NCBI GenBank assembly: GCA_000388065.2
Contig: KB932205.1
Reading direction: 5' to 3' (one strand)
Origin: Fonticula alba ATCC 38817
Taxonomy: Eukaryota; Protista; Nucleariida
DNA length: 6,167 bases
Position 1 is the stretch's first letter, and every line of letters starts with the position of its first letter. Below the pieces are notes generated by a model. It did not search any database. It saw only the letters and a program-made list of their open reading frames with translations, and was not told the DNA's origin. Made by a program: the position numbers and the translations under genes. Shown here in pieces: positions 1-6,167 of the stretch.

Positions 1-1353
1 TGGCTCCCCCCCGGCAGCCGGGACGCTGGTCGAGGCATGCGCTGCGCTTGGCCTTGCTCGCCGTGGTCTGGGGGGCGACCTGGCTGCTGGTGCCGGCGGT
101 GCTGGCCACCGGTCCAAGCCTTTTTCTCCATGCCGCGCCCCGGCCGGTGATGAATGTCGATGGCCAAATGACTTTGGTCACCCTGCCCGGGCGGGATACC
201 ACCGTCAACATCGAGGCCCCCGCGCGCGATGTCCAAGGCTACCACCAGGCCGATGGGCTGGCCATACTGCCGGAAGTTCGCTGGGGCCCCTTCCTCGGTC
301 GGAAGATGGCCTACCGGTTGGTGTCCCCGCGGCCCGACGACCTGGGCCTGGCGGCGAGGATGTTTCTGCCGCCCCCCGCCGGATCGACCATGCCGGTCCT
401 GCTGGAGTTCACCCACGCCTGGGTCGCGTTCTTTATCGAGCCCTTTCACGTGGCCTTTCCCCAGTCGAACATTTTCCTCCTGGCGGCATCGGCCCCAAGC
501 AGCAGCAGCAACAAGGCCGACCTGCTGGGGATCGTTCCCAGCCCGATGGTCGAGAGGTATGCGCTGTTCGTGGGCACACTCTCTGCCGGGGCCTTGGTGA
601 AAACCGACATGCCGGGGGTGGCCGAGCTCGAGAGGCCGGTCCTCACGGCCGCCGGGCCGCAGCGGGTCTTCTACGTGGCATCCGGGGGGGAGCTTCTCGC
701 CGTGCGCATCCCCCAGGATGGCATGGCCAGCATTTCCCACACCCCGCTCGCCTGGGCGCCGACGCACCTGCTTGCCACGCGGGTCTTCTCGTCGGAGGGC
801 GATTGTCCGGACGCCGCGGATGTGCTCCTCATGTCGGCCAGCGGCGAGATCCGGCTGCTTCCCTGCCATGCAGGTGCAACGGCAAGCCCGGAATTCTACC
901 TGGCACTCCTGCCGCCTGGCATCGGTCCCGGCGGGCGTTTCCTCAACCCCCCGGCCGTGTCGATGGCCGAGCCGTTGCCTTTCTTGTACTACGCCGACGA
1001 GACGCTCGGGTGGGTTGACCTTTGGCGATTGGATGTCCGGTCGAGCGTTTCCAGCTGGCAGCGGGTCATCCTCCCCGACATTGCCCGGCCAGGTACCACG
1101 CACTTGGCTCGACTTCGGCTGGGCGTCCACCCGGCCTCCCGGTGGGTGCTGCTCGGGGGCATGGTTGCCCTCTTCGAGTCGGCGGACTTCGGCTGTGGAA
1201 GTGACCCGAGCATCGTGTGCGACGGGCCCGCGGTGTCGACCGGCTCGACGCTGGGGTGGGCCTGTGCCCCGGGGCGCGCCGAGTCGCCCCTTGTCGCGGT
1301 GGACCAATTGTGCGCCGGCTGTGCCGAGGGCCACTACCTGCAGCGCTCGGCCG
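1..1353 (+). CDS. Exon 1 (5'-partial) of a giant receptor-like Ser/Thr (TKL-type) kinase: signal peptide, extracellular domain A and start of the Cys-rich hinge
   Basis: Frame +3 is open from position 3 (APPRQPGRWSRHALRLALLAVVWGATWLLVPAVLA...) to the donor G|GTGCGT at 1353/1354. The track's start at 48 is a TTG. The window opens with TG immediately before in-frame GCT, so an A at position 0 would give ATG (MAPPRQ...); this cannot be verified here. Confidence 0.88.
39..107 (+). other. Signal peptide h/c-region
   Basis: ALRLALLAVVWGATWLLVPAVLA|TG: Arg-rich n-region upstream, hydrophobic core, and a V-x-A (-3/-1) cleavage pattern. Confidence 0.75.
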
Positions 1354-1380
1354 GTGCGTGCCCGGCCACACCGGTCGGCC

Positions 1381-1520
1381 TTCTCCTTTTCTCCTGGCTT
1401 CTGCTCTTCCTTTGTCTTTGTTCTCCTCCTGGCTTCTGCTCTTCCTTTGCCTTTGTTCTCCTCTTCTCCTGGCTTCTGCTCTTCCTTTGTCTTTGTTCTC
1501 CTCTTCTCTTGGCTTCTGTT
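1381..1520 (+). repeat. Intronic 40-bp pyrimidine-rich tandem repeat (minisatellite), about 3.5 copies
   Basis: The unit GGCTTCTGCTCTTCCTTTG(T/C)CTTTGTTCTCCTCTTCTC(C/T)T starts at 1396, 1431, 1471 and 1511 (spacings 35, 40, 40). The first full copy has a 5-nt deletion. Partial copies lie at 1381-1395 and 1511-1520. Confidence 0.95.
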
Positions 1521-1566
1521 TTCCCCTCTCTCTCCCCCCCCCCTCCTCCCCCTCTCCCCTCCGCAC

Positions 1567-1572
1567 ACTGAC
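1567..1572 (+). promoter_or_regulatory. Putative intron branch point (ACTGAC, branch A at 1571)
   Basis: Matches the CTRAY consensus, lies 19 nt upstream of the end of the acceptor AG, and falls among the first adenines after a 194-nt A-free tract. Confidence 0.8.
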
Positions 1573-1590
1573 CCGGCGCCCCTCGCCCAG

Positions 1591-4500
1591 GCGAACCGCC
1601 CTTCTCCCATCCGTCGCACTCATGCCAGCCCTGCCCTCAGCCAAACTGTCGAACATGCAGCGAGCTGCATTGCCTTGTCTGCTCGCCGGGCTTCTTGCCG
1701 CAGGCCACCGGCGCGAGCGGCAGCGTCGCCTGCGTGCCATCCTGCTCGCCGGGCTTCGCCGAGTACGCGGGCGCCTGTCAGCCCACCGGCACGCCGGCCC
1801 TCGATGCCATTTTGACCGTCCCCCAGCCGGAGCCCCTCCCCGGGCTGGACCCCAGCTCGGTGGTCACGGCCTTCGGCCTGACGTGTCTCAGCCCGGCGGC
1901 GTCGACCGGGCGCCCGGTCCTCCCTCTGCCAGGGGCCCCGCGCGACAGGGTCCTCATGTTTGTCGAGGGCCAGCCATCGCGCGTCATGCCACTCGGCGAT
2001 GTCGGCCTGGCAGCCAAGCCGGCCCCGGCCCCGATGTCGATCTTCCCCATGCCCGGGGTGGCCGGCGTGTCCTCCTTCGTGGAGCTCGGGCCCTTTCTGA
2101 CGAATGGCCAGCTGAAGGTGGCACTCATCATGTGCGGCCGGAATGGGGGGACATCGGCCGCCTGGCTGTCCTGCTGGACCCCCGGCAGCGCCGGGGACGC
2201 CGCCTGCACGGTCAGCGACCCGGTGGCCCCGATGTCCCTCCCCGGCGGCGGCGACTGCCTCGAAGTCCGGCCCCTGGACCAGCGGCATGTGGCCGTCCGG
2301 CTGGCCAGCTCCGAGGTGCTGGTGGTCCTGGCGGACCACATCACCACCAGCATCACCACCACGCGCTACCAGGCCGAGCACATGCTCTCGGTGCCGGGCG
2401 CCCCCGCCGGTCGGGCCTACCCGCTGGGCCTTCGGCATGAGTGGCTGCTCCTGGCCCGGGCCGGTGTCGGGGCCACGGCCGGGCCGGCGGCCCTGCCGGT
2501 GGACGACTCGCGCTGGGACGCCCTCCGGGGGCTTCTGCTGCCGGACCTGCCGAAGGACGGCCCCTTCACGCCGGTGCTCCTTCCCCGCCAGGGCGGGGCC
2601 CTGTCCCCGGAGCTGGTCCTCACGCGGCTGGACGGATCCCTGTGGGAGGCTTTCCGCGTGCCGGGGGACATGCTGCCAGCCGGGCGGTCCATCGGCCTGC
2701 CCTCGGCCAGGCAGGTCCTGGGGTCTCTTCCCGGCGCGCTGAGCCCGGGGCTGCCCCACTCGCCGGATGCCCGGTTCGAGGCCATCTCCCTGGGGGCCTC
2801 GCACGATGCCCATCCCAGTGCCTTGATGCTGCTGACGCGGGACTTCTTCGGCGTGGCCCTCCTCCGGTGCGACGCCGGCCCGGCCGCGTGTACATTGCTT
2901 CCCGCGCGGTTTGTCCCCGTGCCGGAGCCGCTGGGGCCGCTGGCCGGCTCGCCCATGTGGGGGGCCCCCATCGGCCGGGTGGCCCCGTCGAAGGACTGGC
3001 TGCCTGGGGTTGCGGCCACCCTGCTGGCCGTGGCCCCGGGCTCGGGCCCGGTGTCGCTGAGCCTCCTGGCCGCCTGCCCCACCGGCGACACCTACGGCTT
3101 TGACTGCCTGCCATGCGACAGTGGGTGTCTCCTTTGCAATGGGCCCGGCGTGGCCGGGTGTCTGGCCTGTCGGTTTTGGCTGCCCGCCGCCCCGGACGCC
3201 TGCCTGGCGGCCTGCCCGGTCGGCACGCACCCCGCCGCCGATGGCCAGTGCCGCTGCCACGCCACCTGCCAGACCTGCCTGCCCGACGGGCAGGGCACCT
3301 ACGAATGCGTTGACTGTCGGCCCGGCGGCGCCCGGGCCCTGGGCGGCGTGGAGCCGGGCCAATGCTTCCCCTGCCATGAGACCTGCGCCACATGCTCGGT
3401 CCCCGGGGACCCGGCGACCTGCCTGGCCTGTCCCGCCGGCCGGCTTGCCCTCGGGGGCCGTTGTGTTGACTCGTGCCCGGCCGGCCACTGGGAGGACCGT
3501 GTGGCCCGGGTGTGCAGGGCCTGCCCGGCGGCCTGCACCGAGTGCCTTTCGGCCACCGAGTGCGCGGCCTGCGCCGGCCGGCACTTCCTCGGCGGCGATA
3601 AGCGGTGTCACCCGTGTCACGGGTCGTGCGCGGCCTGCAGCACGGACATGGCCTGCACCGCATGCCTCGGCGGGCTGGTCTTCCTTGAGGCTGACCCTGC
3701 CACCCCCTCGCTGTGTGCGAGCGCCTGCCCGCCCGGGGAGTACATCGGCTCGGGCAGGTGCGCGACGTGCGCCGCCTCGTGCCAGCTCTGCGCCCACAGC
3801 GGCACCAGCTGCCAGGTGTGCGCCGAGGGCCACCGGTGGGCCGCCTCGCCCCCGGGGCCCGGCGCCGGGGCCCCCTGTGTCCCATGCCCCGAGGGGTGTG
3901 TCGCCTGCACCGCGGCACATTGTCTGTCCTGCCATGGGGGGCTGCTTCTGGACCCGGCCGGCCGGTGTGTGGCCGCCTGCCCGGCCGGGTCATTCAGCAA
4001 CGGCGAGTCGTGCCAGCCGTGCGACGTGAGCTGCGCCGCCTGCGCCGGTGGCATGGCCAACCAGTGCACGGACTGTGCCACCGGGCTGGAGCTTGTCGAA
4101 GTAACCCCCGGTGTCGGCACCTGCGTGTCCGGCTGCCCGGAGGGCCAGTACCGCGCGGGGGCCGAGTGCCTGCCCTGCGACGCGGCCTGCGCCACGTGCA
4201 ACGGCCCTTCGGACAAGGACTGCTGGCGCTGCGCCACCGGTGTCCTGCAGGGCGACGACTGTGTGCAGGCCTGCGCCGCCAGGCATGTGGCCCTGGCCGG
4301 CCGGTGCCTGCCCTGCCACGCATCCTGCGACCGGTGCGCCGGGACCCGGAGCACCGAGTGCCTGCCGGACTGCGCACCCGACTTGCTGGCCCTGCCGGCC
4401 GGGGCGTCGCCCATGCGCTGCGTGCCGGCCTGCCCGGTGGGGTACCACGCCTCGGGCGCCGGGTGCGCCCCCTGCGAGGCGCACTGCGCCAGCTGCCCGG

Positions 4501-6167
4501 CGAGCGCGGCCACCTGCGCCCTGTGCGAGCGCGGGTGGCTGCTGGACGTGCCGAGCTGCGTGACCGGGTGCCCCGGCTCGTCGGTGGCCCTGGGCGGGCT
4601 GTGCACCGCCTGCCACGGGTCCTGCGCCACGTGCTACGGGCCGGAGCCGGAGCACTGCCTCACCTGCGGCCCGGCCGCCCCGCTGCACCTCGACGGTGCT
4701 TGCCTTGGCGCCTGCCCGGCCGGCACCTACCAGGCCGGGCCAGCATGCCTCCCCTGCAGCGTCTCGTGTGCTGCCTGCTCCGGGCCCGACGGCAGCGAGT
4801 GCGTCTCCTGCCCCGGGGACCGGCTCCTCCTCGAGGGCCACTGCCTGTCCTCCTGCCCGGAGGGCTACTTCCCCCAGGGCAATGTGTGCCGGCCGTGTGC
4901 CCCCTCGTGCCGGACGTGCCGCGCCCCGGACACATGTGCCTCCTGCCCGGCGGGCGCCCTCCTGACCCCGGCCGGGGCGTGTGACACGGGCTGCCCGGCC
5001 GGCTGGCTGGCATGTGCCCCATCCGGCACATGCGTCCCCTGCCCGGAGGGCTGCGCCGAGTGCCGGCCCGGCCAGGCGCCCTGCTCGGCCGAGTGCACTG
5101 CCTGTGCCGCCGGGTGGGTCCTCTCGGATGGTGCCTGCCACGGGGCCTGCCCCCCGGGCCAGTACCATCCCCAGGGTGCGGACCGGTGTGCCTGGTGCGA
5201 GCCCGGCTGCCGGACCTGCTTCGGCCAGGCGGACTCCTGCACCAGCTGCCCGGCGGGGCTGGTCCGCACCAGTGCCGGCACATGCGCCGGCTCCTGCCCG
5301 GCCGGCTCGGCGCCCGTGGATGCGGCCTGCCTGCGGTGCCCGGCCGGCTGCGAGCAGTGCACCGCCGGCGAGGGCCAGGCCGGCTGCACCCTCGAGGCGG
5401 ATGGCTCGCTCGCCTGCCCCGTCATGGGGTCCTGTGATGGGTGTGCCGGGGGCCTGTTCCTGGTGGACGGGTCGGCCTGCGTGGCGGCCTGCCCGCCCGG
5501 CACCTTCGGCCAGGAGGGGCCCCTCTCGCCGGTGTGTGCTCCGTGCCATGTGAAGTGCCGCGCCTGCACCGGGCCCGGGGCCGAGGACTGCAGCCGGGTG
5601 CCCGGGTCACGCTCTTCGCATGTTGGCCTGGCGGTGGGCCTGTCGCTGGGCCTGCTGTTTTTGCTGATCCTGCTGCTTCTGCTCGTGCTCTTCCTCGTGC
5701 GCCGGCACGCCGGCATGGCTGCCACCGGCAAGGACCCGGCGGACGCCGAGGACGCCACCATGCTGAACACCATCGTGGAGCTGGCCCTGCCCGGGGCCAT
5801 CCTGGTGGGCGTGGACACGGACTTCCGGCCGCTGGATGAGCAGCTGGGCGCCGGGACCCAGGCGTCGGTGTATGCGGCGCAGGCGATCGGAGCTGGCATC
5901 GCCGCGCGGCTGGGCTGCCCGGACGTGGTGGCCGTCAAGAAGATGCGGCCCGAGGCCATGGCCCCGGTGCACCACGCCATGTTCCAAAATGAGGTGGCGC
6001 TGATGTGGCTGCTGCGCGAGCACGGCCACATCGTCCGGCTCTTCGGGTACAGCGAGCAGCCGCCGGCCATCGTGATGGAGCGCTTCGACACGGACCTGGA
6101 CACGCTGCTGCACTCGGAGGTCCCCCTATCAAGCCTGCAGCTGGCGGACATCTGCCAGCAGTGGGCC
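1591..6167 (+). CDS. Exon 2 (3'-partial) of the receptor kinase: rest of the hinge, domain B, 18 furin-like repeats, TM helix and N-terminal part of the kinase domain
   Basis: After the acceptor CCCAG| at 1590, the phase-1 junction G+GC gives Gly. Frame +3 (codons from 1593) translates without a stop to 6167 (EPPFSHPSHSCQPCPQPNCRTC...LADICQQWA). Third positions are strongly G/C and the domain order is coherent. The ORF track omits it because no stop is reached. Confidence 0.95.
3075..5591 (+). repeat. Array of 18 furin-like / growth-factor-receptor Cys-rich repeats (~839 aa)
   Basis: Recurring C-x(1-2)-C-x3-C-x2-C-x(4-8)-C-x2-C-xn-C-x3-C(P)xG units, e.g. CLPCDAACATCNGPSDKDCWRCATGVLQGDDCVQAC. 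About 140 Cys by manual count (~17%). Units are diverged at the DNA level. Confidence 0.93.
5622..5699 (+). other. Single transmembrane helix (type I topology)
   Basis: VGLAVGLSLGLLFLLILLLLLVLFLV followed by the RRH positive-inside stop-transfer residues. Confidence 0.95.
5823..6167 (+). other. Protein kinase domain, subdomains I-V (truncated by the window end), probably TKL group
   Basis: Gly-loop LGAGTQASVY (5844-5873), VAVK (5928-5939), alphaC Glu in FQNEVALM (Glu 5991-5993), HIVRLFGYS, and hinge IVMERF (gatekeeper Met at 6075). HRD and DFG are not in the window, so the TKL vs TK call is inferred. Confidence 0.93.

What the first reader, a model, noticed from the sequence alone, without database searches (positions are those of the whole stretch)
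1..6167. Hidden >1,970-aa receptor kinase with two unknown head domains on a furin-repeat stalk
The sequence shows a signal peptide, domain A, a Cys hinge, domain B, 18 furin-like repeats, a TM helix and a kinase. Furin-like Cys-rich ectodomains joined to a kinase are known from metazoan EGFR/insulin receptors and the CxxC-rich Entamoeba transmembrane kinases. This layout matches neither: there are no L-domains, the repeats form a very long stalk, and the heads are unrecognisable. Inference: an independently assembled surface-sensing receptor of a microbial eukaryote, with the long stalk projecting ligand-binding heads away from the cell. If the source is an aggregative amoeba such as Fonticula, it is a candidate for cell-cell, kin or prey recognition, analogous in role to Dictyostelium TgrB1/TgrC1.
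Basis: partly seen in the sequence, partly recalled or inferred. Interest (0 to 1): 0.75.

Follow-up and report, generated by a model that had tools for sequence, protein, structure and literature searches.

The report
Fonticula double-propeller receptor kinase gene
The window holds most of one gene from a family of some 65 to 100 giant cell-surface receptor kinases found only in the social amoeba Fonticula alba; its two "unknown" heads are predicted seven-bladed beta-propellers, and what they sense is untested.

Summary
One reading frame runs through the whole window, broken only by a 237-nt GT-AG intron (1354-1590). It encodes a signal peptide (start codon lost in an assembly gap), head A, a Cys cap and hinge, head B, 18 CxxC furin/VSP-like units, a TM helix and a kinase N-lobe cut off by the window end.

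The genome is Fonticula alba. Both heads have no Pfam match, but AlphaFold2 models them confidently (pLDDT 88 and 84) as generic seven-bladed beta-propellers, unrelated to each other in sequence.

A profile of head A finds only 64 strong relatives among 1.84 billion proteins. All seven that I sampled are F. alba. The genome has at least 97 head-A and 82 head-B matches, mostly in tandem arrays.

The heads diverge fastest (about 29% identity), then the stalk (about 50%), then the kinase (about 65%). A 349-nt stalk tract is 97% identical to the upstream neighbour, which indicates gene conversion.

Paralogue kinases are Ser/Thr-type and closest to RAF (TKL). Most annotated paralogues are named "TKL protein kinase".

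No paper I found describes the family. This scan reached the same reading on other DNA of this genome. I rate it a new variant of a known kind (single-pass receptor kinase). Ligand, expression and any kin-recognition role remain untested.

The parts
3..107 (+). Signal peptide without its start codon. It has an Arg-rich n-region, a hydrophobic core at residues 16-35, and a likely cleavage site after VLA.
   Evidence: Translation. Hydropathy peak of 2.23 at residues 16-35. Paralogues carry 26-43 residues before the same FLHAAP motif, against 40 here, so the Met lies only a few codons upstream in the N gap.
108..1187 (+). Head A: a predicted seven-bladed beta-propeller with no Pfam family.
   Evidence: No Pfam match at E<=10. 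AF2 on 30 paralogues gives pLDDT 87.7 and pTM 0.88, all-beta with about 28 strands. VIA-align gives Z of about 15 with 290-310 residues aligned to many unrelated 7-blade propellers. Foldseek lists 416 matches at E<=1e-3; the 46 rows shown are beta-propeller proteins or complexes that contain them.
1188..1353 (+). Cys cap of head A. Five of its Cys residues are invariant in the family. It is the first half of the inter-head hinge, and exon 1 ends at 1353 in phase 1.
   Evidence: The invariant columns C363, C371, C386, C402 and C405 of alignment A1. Median identity to paralogues is 48%.
1354..1590 (+). Intron of 237 nt with GTGCGT...CTGAC...CAG. It holds a 40-nt CT-rich tandem repeat of 3.6 copies at 1381-1518.
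1591..1790 (+). Hinge: one furin/VSP-like CxxC unit with 9 invariant Cys, lying between the two heads.
   Evidence: Invariant C11, C14, C19, C22, C27, C30, C47, C51 and C62 in alignment A2. Model pLDDT is 84-89.
1791..3083 (+). Head B: a second predicted seven-bladed beta-propeller. It has no Pfam family and is unrelated in sequence to head A.
   Evidence: No Pfam match. AF2 gives pLDDT 84.1 and pTM 0.86. VIA-align gives Z of 17-20 with about 300-320 residues aligned, including the LGI1 EPTP domain and WD40 propellers. Foldseek is likewise generic. BLASTP and hhalign of A against B find nothing beyond a 16-column Cys motif.
3105..5591 (+). Stalk: 18 furin/VSP-like units of about 47 aa. A typical unit is CxxCx3CxxC, a third CxxC after 4-8 residues, then Cx3C. 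Several units are short, and the last is a partial cap.
   Evidence: Cys map and unit list. Pfam VSP PF03302 at 6.1e-18, 65 bits against a cut-off of 31. GF_recep_IV is below its cut-off here but above it in the neighbour.
4359..4707 (+). Tract inside the stalk that is 97% identical to the upstream tandem neighbour: a gene-conversion footprint.
   Evidence: 10 mismatches in 349 nt, and only 1 in 4359-4546, against 54-87% identity in the 90-column windows elsewhere in the alignment.
5619..5699 (+). Single transmembrane helix.
   Evidence: 27 hydrophobic residues. It is the only strong hydropathy peak of exon 2, at 3.31.
5700..5831 (+). Juxtamembrane segment, starting with the RRH stop-transfer residues. 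It holds the conserved motif ATMLNTIVELALPGAILV at 5754-5807.
   Evidence: The motif is nearly identical in the neighbour. The TM/JM segment is up to 87% identical to paralogues.
5832..6167 (+). Protein kinase N-lobe up to helix E: Gly loop GAGTQASV (5847-5870), VAVK lysine (5928-5942) and the alpha-C Glu in FQNEVALM (5982-6005). The catalytic loop and C-lobe lie beyond the window.
   Evidence: PF07714 at 4e-8 and PF00069 at 3.8e-6. Motif coordinates. It is 90% identical to the N-lobe of P0070 and P0071. P0071 carries HCDLKPGN, DLG and APE.

Best explanation
The window holds about 90% of a real two-exon gene of Fonticula alba for a type-I single-pass receptor Ser/Thr kinase of about 2,150 aa. 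It is one member of a lineage-specific, tandemly arrayed family that earlier notes of this scan call the 'double-propeller receptor kinases'.

Shown here:
- the gene structure and the domain order;
- the beta-propeller prediction for both heads;
- restriction of head A, at the sequence level, to F. alba among the strong relatives sampled, and a Fonticula-only run of kinase hits among long proteins;
- the divergence gradient from heads to stalk to kinase;
- a gene-conversion tract shared with the upstream neighbour.

Inferred mechanism: the two propellers sit at the tip of a rigid, disulphide-rich rod of 18 CxxC units. They bind an extracellular ligand on their variable faces. Ligand-driven dimerisation or clustering brings the cytoplasmic TKL-like kinases together for trans-phosphorylation.

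The large, fast-diverging head repertoire on a homogenised signalling chassis suggests a battery of sensors for many different ligands. These could be bacterial prey, environmental cues or cell-surface cues.
For: Gene reality: the open frame, strong codon-position GC bias and a consensus intron conserved in position and phase with the annotated paralogue P0071. All family-invariant residues are kept.

Organism: 17 fetched loci of this genome encode annotated F. alba proteins at >=98% identity.

Heads: AF2 pLDDT 88 and 84, with propeller matches at Z 15-20.

Family size and distribution: 97 head-A and 82 head-B genomic matches. There are 64 cluster representatives at E<=1e-10 in 1.84e9 proteins, and 7 of 7 sampled are F. 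alba. The kinase search among long proteins gives about 45 F. alba proteins, then drops to bacterial kinases at E of about 1e-12.

Kinase type: the neighbour and the paralogues have H[RC]DLKP[GA]N, DLG and VAIK. The best solved relatives are BRAF/RAF at 2e-13. Suga et al. 2014 found no tyrosine kinases in Fonticula (PMC4342544).

Divergence gradient: heads about 29%, stalk about 50%, kinase N-lobe about 65% median identity. The nearest relative changes from domain to domain. The conversion tract is shown.
Against: - There is no transcript evidence for this copy. The exon-1 search found no expressed or annotated fragment.
- The start codon and the catalytic half of the kinase are outside the readable sequence, so catalytic competence of this copy is inferred from a 90% identical N-lobe in P0071.
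- A long open frame is weaker evidence than usual in DNA of 72-77% GC: antisense frames stay open for up to 789 codons.
- The propeller folds are predictions.
- Ligand binding, dimerisation and signalling are inferred by analogy only.
- Only 7 of the 64 strong head-A relatives were checked for source organism.
Confidence: 0.85

Rival explanations
1. Role-specific reading 1: the family is a prey or bacterial-pattern recognition and phagocytosis receptor repertoire. It would work like the Entamoeba transmembrane kinases or the non-RD pattern-recognition receptor kinases of plants. Each head pair would recognise a different microbial surface molecule.
For: F. alba is a bacterivore. The heads diverge fastest and are old, at 24-38% identity, which fits many distinct ligands. 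Many paralogues, including the neighbour and P0071, have non-RD HCD catalytic loops. Seven-bladed bacterial propeller lectins appear among the structural matches, but they do not stand out. The CxxC stalk plus RAF-like kinase mirrors the Entamoeba TMKs as summarised in PMC10463195.
Against: There are no binding, expression or phenotype data. The propeller matches are generic and imply no lectin activity. The link between non-RD kinases and immunity is a rule from plants and rests on my own knowledge. Homology of this kinase to the Entamoeba TMKs was not tested.
Confidence: 0.35
2. Role-specific reading 2, the first reader's: a kin, self or cell-cell recognition system used during aggregation, analogous in role to Dictyostelium TgrB1/TgrC1.
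For: F. alba is an aggregative amoeba (PMC5055082). The gene belongs to a large tandem family with variable distal ectodomains and gene conversion.
Against: Allorecognition loci are typically a few highly polymorphic genes, not about 100 ancient paralogues at about 30% head identity. Only one isolate is sequenced, so polymorphism cannot be tested. There are no IPT/TIG domains. No ligand-receptor pairing is evident.
Confidence: 0.12
3. This particular copy is a pseudogene or an assembly chimera. It sits between an assembly gap and unreadable sequence, and the near-identical stalk tract could be a collapse or mis-join between tandem repeats.
For: N runs lie on both sides. No identical annotated or expressed product was retrieved. 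A 97%-identical tract is shared with the neighbour. At least one family member in the genome carries in-frame stops (C8:1826268, 4 TGA).
Against: 1,976 codons carry no frameshift or stop other than the one inside the consensus intron. All invariant Cys, Trp and Asp positions are retained. GC3 bias is intact along the whole length. The tract is in frame and in register, and identity falls off gradually on its 5' side (82-87%). That is expected of conversion rather than a mis-join.
Confidence: 0.06

Closest known systems
Entamoeba histolytica transmembrane kinases (EhTMKs; Beck et al. 2005, as cited in PMC10463195 and PMC2880585)
   Same: A large lineage-specific family of single-pass receptor kinases in an amoeba. 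The ectodomain is built of CxxC repeats of the Giardia VSP/furin type. The kinase is reported to branch near RAF/STKR. Here the stalk matches Pfam VSP and the best solved kinase relatives are RAF.
   Different: In the accounts I could read, EhTMKs have no beta-propeller heads. Here two sequence-unrelated seven-bladed propellers cap the stalk, the stalk is far longer (18 units), and the protein is about 2,150 aa. Direct kinase homology was not tested, because no EhTMK sequence was available to the tools and Beck 2005 is not held.
Metazoan EGFR/ErbB and insulin-receptor families
   Same: Type-I receptor kinases with furin-like Cys-rich regions. GF_recep_IV scores weakly here and above its cut-off in the neighbour.
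   Different: There are no L-domains. The kinase is Ser/Thr-type (HxDLKPxN), not a tyrosine kinase (HRDLAARN). Fonticula has no group A or B TKs (PMC4342544). Here the Cys-rich part is a long stalk rather than an inter-L-domain module.
Sema-PSI receptors (MET/RON, plexins) and ROS1/Sevenless (comparison from my own knowledge)
   Same: A seven-bladed (Sema) or six-bladed (YWTD) extracellular beta-propeller, followed by a small Cys-rich module, on a single-pass receptor kinase.
   Different: There is no Sema, PSI or YWTD/LDL-B Pfam match even at E<=10. Neither family stands out among the structural matches. Those receptors carry tyrosine kinases. The resemblance is one of design, not of ancestry.
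Mycobacterium tuberculosis PknD-type bacterial receptor Ser/Thr kinases (from my own knowledge)
   Same: A beta-propeller sensor domain outside, one TM helix, and a Hanks-type Ser/Thr kinase inside.
   Different: PknD has the opposite topology, with the kinase N-terminal. It has a single six-bladed NHL propeller and no Cys-rich stalk. It is bacterial.
Annotated F. alba paralogues, e.g. KCV68124.1/XP_009497498.1 'TKL protein kinase' (P0071, 2143 aa)
   Same: Same architecture and same intron position. It is 53.6% identical over exon 2 and 90% over the kinase N-lobe.
   Different: Head A is only about 34% identical (C10:313344). It is a different locus (C10 against C5). The window's own product was not among the retrieved records.

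Membership tests
Fonticula alba double-propeller receptor kinase family (unnamed; GenBank 'TKL protein kinase' / 'hypothetical protein' H696_*) | Head A domain homologous to the family, including the invariant Cys cap | tested here: met
   30-42% identity to 29 full-length genomic paralogues, best E of 1.7e-74. All 12 invariant columns are kept.
Fonticula alba double-propeller receptor kinase family (unnamed; GenBank 'TKL protein kinase' / 'hypothetical protein' H696_*) | Head B domain homologous to the family | tested here: met
   27-42% identity, best E of 3.3e-87.
Fonticula alba double-propeller receptor kinase family (unnamed; GenBank 'TKL protein kinase' / 'hypothetical protein' H696_*) | Phase-1 intron between the head-A cap and the hinge | tested here: met
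   Same codon and phase as in annotated P0071.
Fonticula alba double-propeller receptor kinase family (unnamed; GenBank 'TKL protein kinase' / 'hypothetical protein' H696_*) | CxxC stalk, a single TM helix and a C-terminal kinase | tested here: met
   The kinase N-lobe is 90% identical to P0070 and P0071. The C-lobe is not visible.
TKL group of eukaryotic protein kinases | Kinase domain closest to TKL members (RAF, MLK, STKR, IRAK/Pelle) in a phylogeny | tested here: inconclusive
   No tree could be built because no reference set was available. The neighbour's kinase hits BRAF/RAF best among solved structures, but only at 2e-13. Pfam Pkinase scores above PK_Tyr_Ser-Thr. GenBank names many paralogues 'TKL protein kinase'.
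TKL group of eukaryotic protein kinases | Intact catalytic motifs (VAIK, HRD-type loop, DFG, APE) in this gene | tested here: inconclusive
   The Gly loop, VAVK and the alpha-C Glu are present. The catalytic loop, DFG and APE lie beyond the window. Paralogues have HxDLKPxN, DLG and APE/SPE.
Tyrosine kinases / EGFR-InsR type receptor tyrosine kinases | Receptor L-domains flanking a furin-like region | tested here: not met
   No PF01030 or PF00757 match. The heads are blank at E<=10.
Tyrosine kinases / EGFR-InsR type receptor tyrosine kinases | TK catalytic loop HRDLAARN or HRDLRAAN | tested here: not met
   Tested in paralogues only: 24 of 28 with a readable loop have HxDLKPxN and the other four are close variants (HCDIKPGN, HRDIKSGN, HGDIKPGN, HQDIKSRN); none has a TK-type loop. 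Suga et al. 2014 report no TK in Fonticula.
Entamoeba TMK family | CxxC-rich (VSP/Igl-like) ectodomain, TM helix and kinase | tested here: met
   PF03302 at 6.1e-18, above its cut-off, plus a TM helix and a kinase. This shows shared design only.
Entamoeba TMK family | Kinase domain orthologous or monophyletic with EhTMK kinases | not tested
   No EhTMK sequence could be reached. No Entamoeba protein appeared in the kinase search among long proteins, but that search depends on shared words.
Giardia variant-specific surface proteins (Pfam VSP) | CxxC-rich ectodomain ending in a TM helix and a short conserved CRGKA tail, with no enzymatic domain | tested here: not met
   The repeat type matches, but the TM helix is followed by a juxtamembrane segment and a kinase. 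The tail motif is recalled from my own knowledge.
Dictyostelium TgrB1/TgrC1 | IPT/TIG-domain ectodomain and a polymorphic ligand-receptor gene pair | tested here: not met
   No TIG or IPT Pfam match. Polymorphism cannot be tested with one sequenced isolate.
Sema/PSI or YWTD propeller receptors | Sema, PSI or LDL-receptor class B sequence signatures | tested here: not met
   No Pfam match at E<=10. The structural matches are generic propellers with no family standing out.

The most novel reading that the evidence does not exclude
Fonticula alba reportedly lacks tyrosine kinases, and one survey detected no GPCRs in it. It may have built its main surface-sensing system independently: about 100 double-propeller receptor Ser/Thr kinases, many of them non-RD. 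Their ancient, hypervariable heads would act as a germline-encoded pattern-recognition repertoire for bacterial prey and/or conspecific cells. That would make it a holomycotan counterpart of the plant RLK/PRR and Entamoeba TMK expansions, with gene conversion keeping the signalling chassis uniform.
Probability: 0.3. Interest if true: 0.8.

Novelty: new variant of a known kind. Interest (0 to 1): 0.55.

Why it matters
Fungi lack receptor kinases (Kiss et al. 2019, PMC6733946). Fonticula, in the sister lineage of fungi, has no tyrosine kinases (PMC4342544), and that same survey detected no GPCRs in it.

With at least 64-97 members, this family could be a fifth or more of the reported 323 Ser/Thr kinases. 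That share is my rough estimate. It would then be the organism's dominant surface-sensor set.

The family is a clean natural example of a receptor-kinase system assembled independently from a tandem propeller, a furin-like rod and a TKL-like kinase. It shows modular evolution: old, diverse heads on a stalk and kinase homogenised by gene conversion.

It also offers candidates for how an aggregative amoeba senses prey and neighbours. As far as the searchable literature shows, the family has not been described.

Tried and rejected
- Pfam on both heads at E<=10 found nothing.
- BLASTP and hhalign of head A against head B showed no homology beyond a 16-column Cys motif.
- The ESM Atlas look-alikes for both heads had low recognition scores and gave only weak, uninformative leads.
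- The search for homologous proteins with exon 1, meant to catch annotated or expressed fragments crossing the splice junction, returned nothing at E<=1e-10. Splicing therefore rests on sequence signals and on paralogue models.
- The search for homologous proteins with head B returned only two paralogues because of the word-based candidate cap.
- The look-up of encoding contigs for P0002 found nothing on record.
The head-B alignment therefore uses 4 complete and 22 partial rows.
- Sequence downstream of the window reads N for more than 16 kb. I did not try to recover it by other routes.
- Antisense ORFs of 428-771 aa have no Pfam match. I read them as shadows of the GC3-rich coding strand.
- Literature: no paper combining Fonticula with TKL, receptor kinase, furin-like or kinome describes the family. 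Beck et al. 2005 is not held.
- No kinase phylogeny was built, for lack of reference sequences.
- The exons were searched separately by reference.
Full report
**What is in the window.** The window is G000:C5:159178-165344 of a 31.3-Mb, 214-contig genome. GC rises from 66-68% at the 5' end to 77%. Frame 3 of the + strand is open from 3 to 1568 and from 1572 to 6167, with one stop between them. With this base composition a stop is expected about every 73 codons, so 1,525 open codons have a chance of about 8e-10. GC3 is 84-94% against GC2 of 44-72%, the signature of coding sequence in a GC-rich genome. Antisense frames also stay open for up to 789 codons, but they have no Pfam match. I read them as shadows of the coding strand.

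**The intron.** The single stop lies in a stretch that is 83% pyrimidine and 59.5% GC. It is bounded by G|GTGCGT at 1354 and CAG| at 1590, with a CTGAC branch site about 20 nt upstream of the acceptor. The stretch is 237 nt, in phase 1, and removing it creates a Gly codon. Annotated paralogous proteins align to the window without a break across it, for example P0013 residues 452/454 and P0016 residues 336/338 at nt 1352/1593. The closest full-length annotated paralogue is P0071 (KCV68124.1). It has its own 233-nt GT-AG phase-1 intron at the homologous codon.

**The edges.** A run of 1,301 N ends exactly at window position 1, and sequence reads N for more than 16 kb after position 6167. There is no ATG in the window. 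Paralogues carry 26-43 residues before the conserved FLHAAP motif and the window has 40, so the start is probably only a few codons into the gap. The kinase is cut after helix E (DICQQWA), before the catalytic loop. I did not try to obtain the unreadable downstream stretch by other means.

**Domain order (the observation).**
- Hydrophobic signal segment, residues 16-35.
- Head A, nt 108-1187.
- A Cys cap, nt 1188-1353.
- The intron.
- One CxxC hinge unit, nt 1591-1790.
- Head B, nt 1791-3083.
- 18 CxxC units of about 47 aa, nt 3105-5591, the last one partial.
- A 27-residue TM helix, nt 5619-5699.
- A juxtamembrane segment with a conserved ATMLNTIVELALPGAILV motif.
- A kinase N-lobe with a Gly loop, the VAVK lysine and the alpha-C Glu.

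Pfam gives VSP at 6.1e-18 (above its cut-off) and a weak GF_recep_IV match on the stalk, and PK_Tyr_Ser-Thr at 4e-8 on the C-terminus.

**The heads.** Neither head matches any Pfam family even at E<=10. BLASTP and profile-profile comparison find no similarity between A and B beyond a short Cys motif. The ESM Atlas gave no usable lead.

AlphaFold2 on alignments of genomic paralogues (30 and 27 rows) gives confident all-beta models. Head A has pLDDT 87.7 and pTM 0.88; hinge plus head B has pLDDT 84.1 and pTM 0.86.

Structure searches return hundreds of seven-bladed beta-propellers. Head A reaches Z of about 15 with 290-310 residues aligned. Head B reaches Z of 17-20 with about 300-320 aligned. 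The matches include WD40 proteins, nucleoporins, the LGI1 EPTP domain and bacterial propeller lectins, and no family stands apart. The 'unknown' heads are therefore two sequence-orphan seven-bladed propellers, each followed by a Cys-rich module. The fold says nothing about the ligand.

**Organism and family.** Seventeen of the fetched loci of this genome encode annotated Fonticula alba proteins at >=98% identity, so the genome is F. alba ATCC 38817.

Head A has 97 matches in the genome, about 45 of them full length at 29-42% identity, plus a pseudogene with four TGA stops. Head B has 82 matches. They cluster on C5, C8, C9, C10, C11 and C17. The window lies in a C5 array whose retrieved members span locus tags H696_03227 to 03248. 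Its upstream neighbour is another member.

A head-A profile searched with HMMER against 1.84 billion cluster representatives finds 68 proteins at E<=1e-3 and 64 at E<=1e-10. All seven strong hits that I looked up are F. alba. The weak tail includes an RCC1-family protein from a metagenome. A kinase-region search among long proteins returns about 45 F. alba proteins of about 2,000-2,500 aa. Most are named 'TKL protein kinase' or 'serine/threonine protein kinase' and a few 'hypothetical protein'. The list then falls to bacterial kinases at E of about 1e-12. In the data reachable here the family looks specific to Fonticula. Whether Parvularia or Nuclearia proteomes are in those libraries is unknown to me.

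**The kinase.** The neighbour's kinase and 28 paralogues show VAIK, H[RC]DLKP[GA]N (both RD and non-RD forms), DLG in place of DFG, and APE/SPE. These motifs predict an active Ser/Thr-type enzyme.

The best solved relatives are BRAF/RAF, but only at 2e-13. Pfam Pkinase scores above PK_Tyr_Ser-Thr. I therefore call it a divergent TKL-like Ser/Thr kinase. This fits Suga et al. 2014, who found no tyrosine kinases in Fonticula (PMC4342544). The window's N-lobe is 90% identical to that of P0070 and P0071. Activity of this copy is inferred, not shown.

**Evolutionary pattern.** Median identity of the window's parts to the retrieved paralogues is 29% for each propeller, 42-48% for the cap and hinge, 50% for the stalk, 54% for TM/JM and 65% for the kinase N-lobe.

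The nearest relative also changes along the gene: P0006 for head A and P0074/P0006 for head B, P0071/P0002 for the stalk, H696_03231 for TM/JM (87%), and P0070/P0071 for the kinase.

Against the upstream neighbour, nucleotide identity is 54-87% except for nt 4359-4707. That tract has 10 mismatches in 349 nt, and only one in its first 188 nt. It is a gene-conversion tract. The picture is of old, individual heads on a partly homogenised stalk and kinase chassis.

**How it most likely works.**
- Shown: a type-I topology, with two propellers at the tip of a long disulphide-rich rod and a kinase inside the cell.
- Inferred: ligand binding on the variable propeller faces, ligand-driven dimerisation or clustering, and trans-phosphorylation.
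- The size and head diversity of the family suggest many different ligands.
- I rank bacterial-prey or environmental pattern sensing at about 0.35, above kin or self recognition at about 0.12. About 100 ancient paralogues look more like a plant RLK or Entamoeba TMK repertoire than like a polymorphic allorecognition pair.
- Nothing here tests either role.

**Comparison with what is known.**
- The closest design is the Entamoeba TMK family, with a VSP-type CxxC ectodomain and a RAF-like kinase (PMC10463195). The double-propeller head and the 18-unit stalk are not part of that family as described, and kinase homology was not tested.
- EGFR/InsR membership fails: there are no L-domains and no TK loop.
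- MET/plexin (Sema-PSI), ROS1 (YWTD) and bacterial PknD share the idea of a propeller sensor on a kinase, but not the sequence. These comparisons rest on my own knowledge.
- Kiss et al. 2019 counted 323 Ser/Thr kinases and detected no GPCRs in Fonticula, and found no receptor kinases in fungi (PMC6733946). They do not mention this family.
- No paper in the library does.

**Earlier notes of this scan.** Several earlier notes on other windows of the same genome reached the same reading: double-propeller heads, 65-95 genes, Fonticula only, gene conversion, and no paper. My tests were made independently on this window and agree. I did not test their claims of transcription or of secreted kinase-less relatives.

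**Verdict.** This is a real but ordinary member of a remarkable, lineage-specific and apparently undescribed receptor-kinase family. It is a new variant of a known kind. No identical annotated product was retrieved, but the tools may omit the window's own records, so 'hidden' cannot be decided.

Noticed in passing
window 4359-4707 vs L009 (G000:C5:155178-157876): A 349-nt stalk tract is 97% identical to the upstream tandem neighbour, with 1 mismatch in the first 188 nt. The 90-column windows elsewhere in the alignment are 54-87% identical. I read this as gene conversion between adjacent paralogues.
   Followed up: yes
window 1381-1518: The intron contains a 40-nt CT-rich tandem repeat of 3.6 copies (86% matches), followed by a C-rich polypyrimidine tract. 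The homologous intron of P0071 (L039:2767-2999) is a similar length and 67% pyrimidine against 83% here; I did not scan it for repeats.
   Followed up: partly
window 5754-5807: The juxtamembrane motif ATMLNTIVELALPGAILV is almost identical in the neighbour (ATMLNTIMELALPGAILV). The TM/JM segment is up to 87% identical to H696_03231. It may be a regulatory or dimerisation element N-terminal to the kinase.
   Followed up: no
family-wide (P0005-P0063): The catalytic loops split into RD (HRDLKPGN) and non-RD (HCDLKP[GA]N, and one HGD) forms. Nearly all have DLG instead of DFG. A few members (P0016, P0040, P0062) lack a recognisable HxD loop and may be pseudokinases.
   Followed up: partly
P0023 (3455 aa) and P0024 (3462 aa), contig of 619,120 bases: Each of these annotated proteins matches the head-A profile in two stretches. 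In P0023 the best head-A stretch lies at residues 1380-1788. They look like two tandem genes merged into one gene model.
   Followed up: no
P0071 (KCV68124.1), L039:1492: The annotated model starts MDHAFLHAVP, with no signal peptide, whereas relatives have 26-43 residues before this motif. The start codon is probably mis-called.
   Followed up: partly
L009:2580-2699 (just upstream of the 1301-N gap): After ...SVPWSG the upstream neighbour's kinase frame runs into Pro/Arg-rich text with a (CA)n microsatellite, then the gap. This is probably an intron in kinase subdomain X, so that gene is truncated by the assembly too.
   Followed up: no
window 3-1619, 1623-3989, 3993-5606 (minus strand): Antisense frames stay open for 538-789 codons, and the ORFs in them that were scanned (428-771 aa) have no Pfam match. 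They are a reminder that ORF length alone is weak evidence in this 72-77% GC genome.
   Followed up: yes
G000:C8:1826268-1827281: A head-A match carries four in-frame TGA codons. It is a likely pseudogene of the family.
   Followed up: no
literature: PMC12716839 (eLife 2025): The paper reports five or six non-GPCR transmembrane proteins with HRM domains in F. alba, which is otherwise a holozoan feature. These could be Cys-rich-stalk receptors related to this family, or a chance match to Cys repeats. The window's own stalk shows no HRM match at E<=0.01.
   Followed up: no
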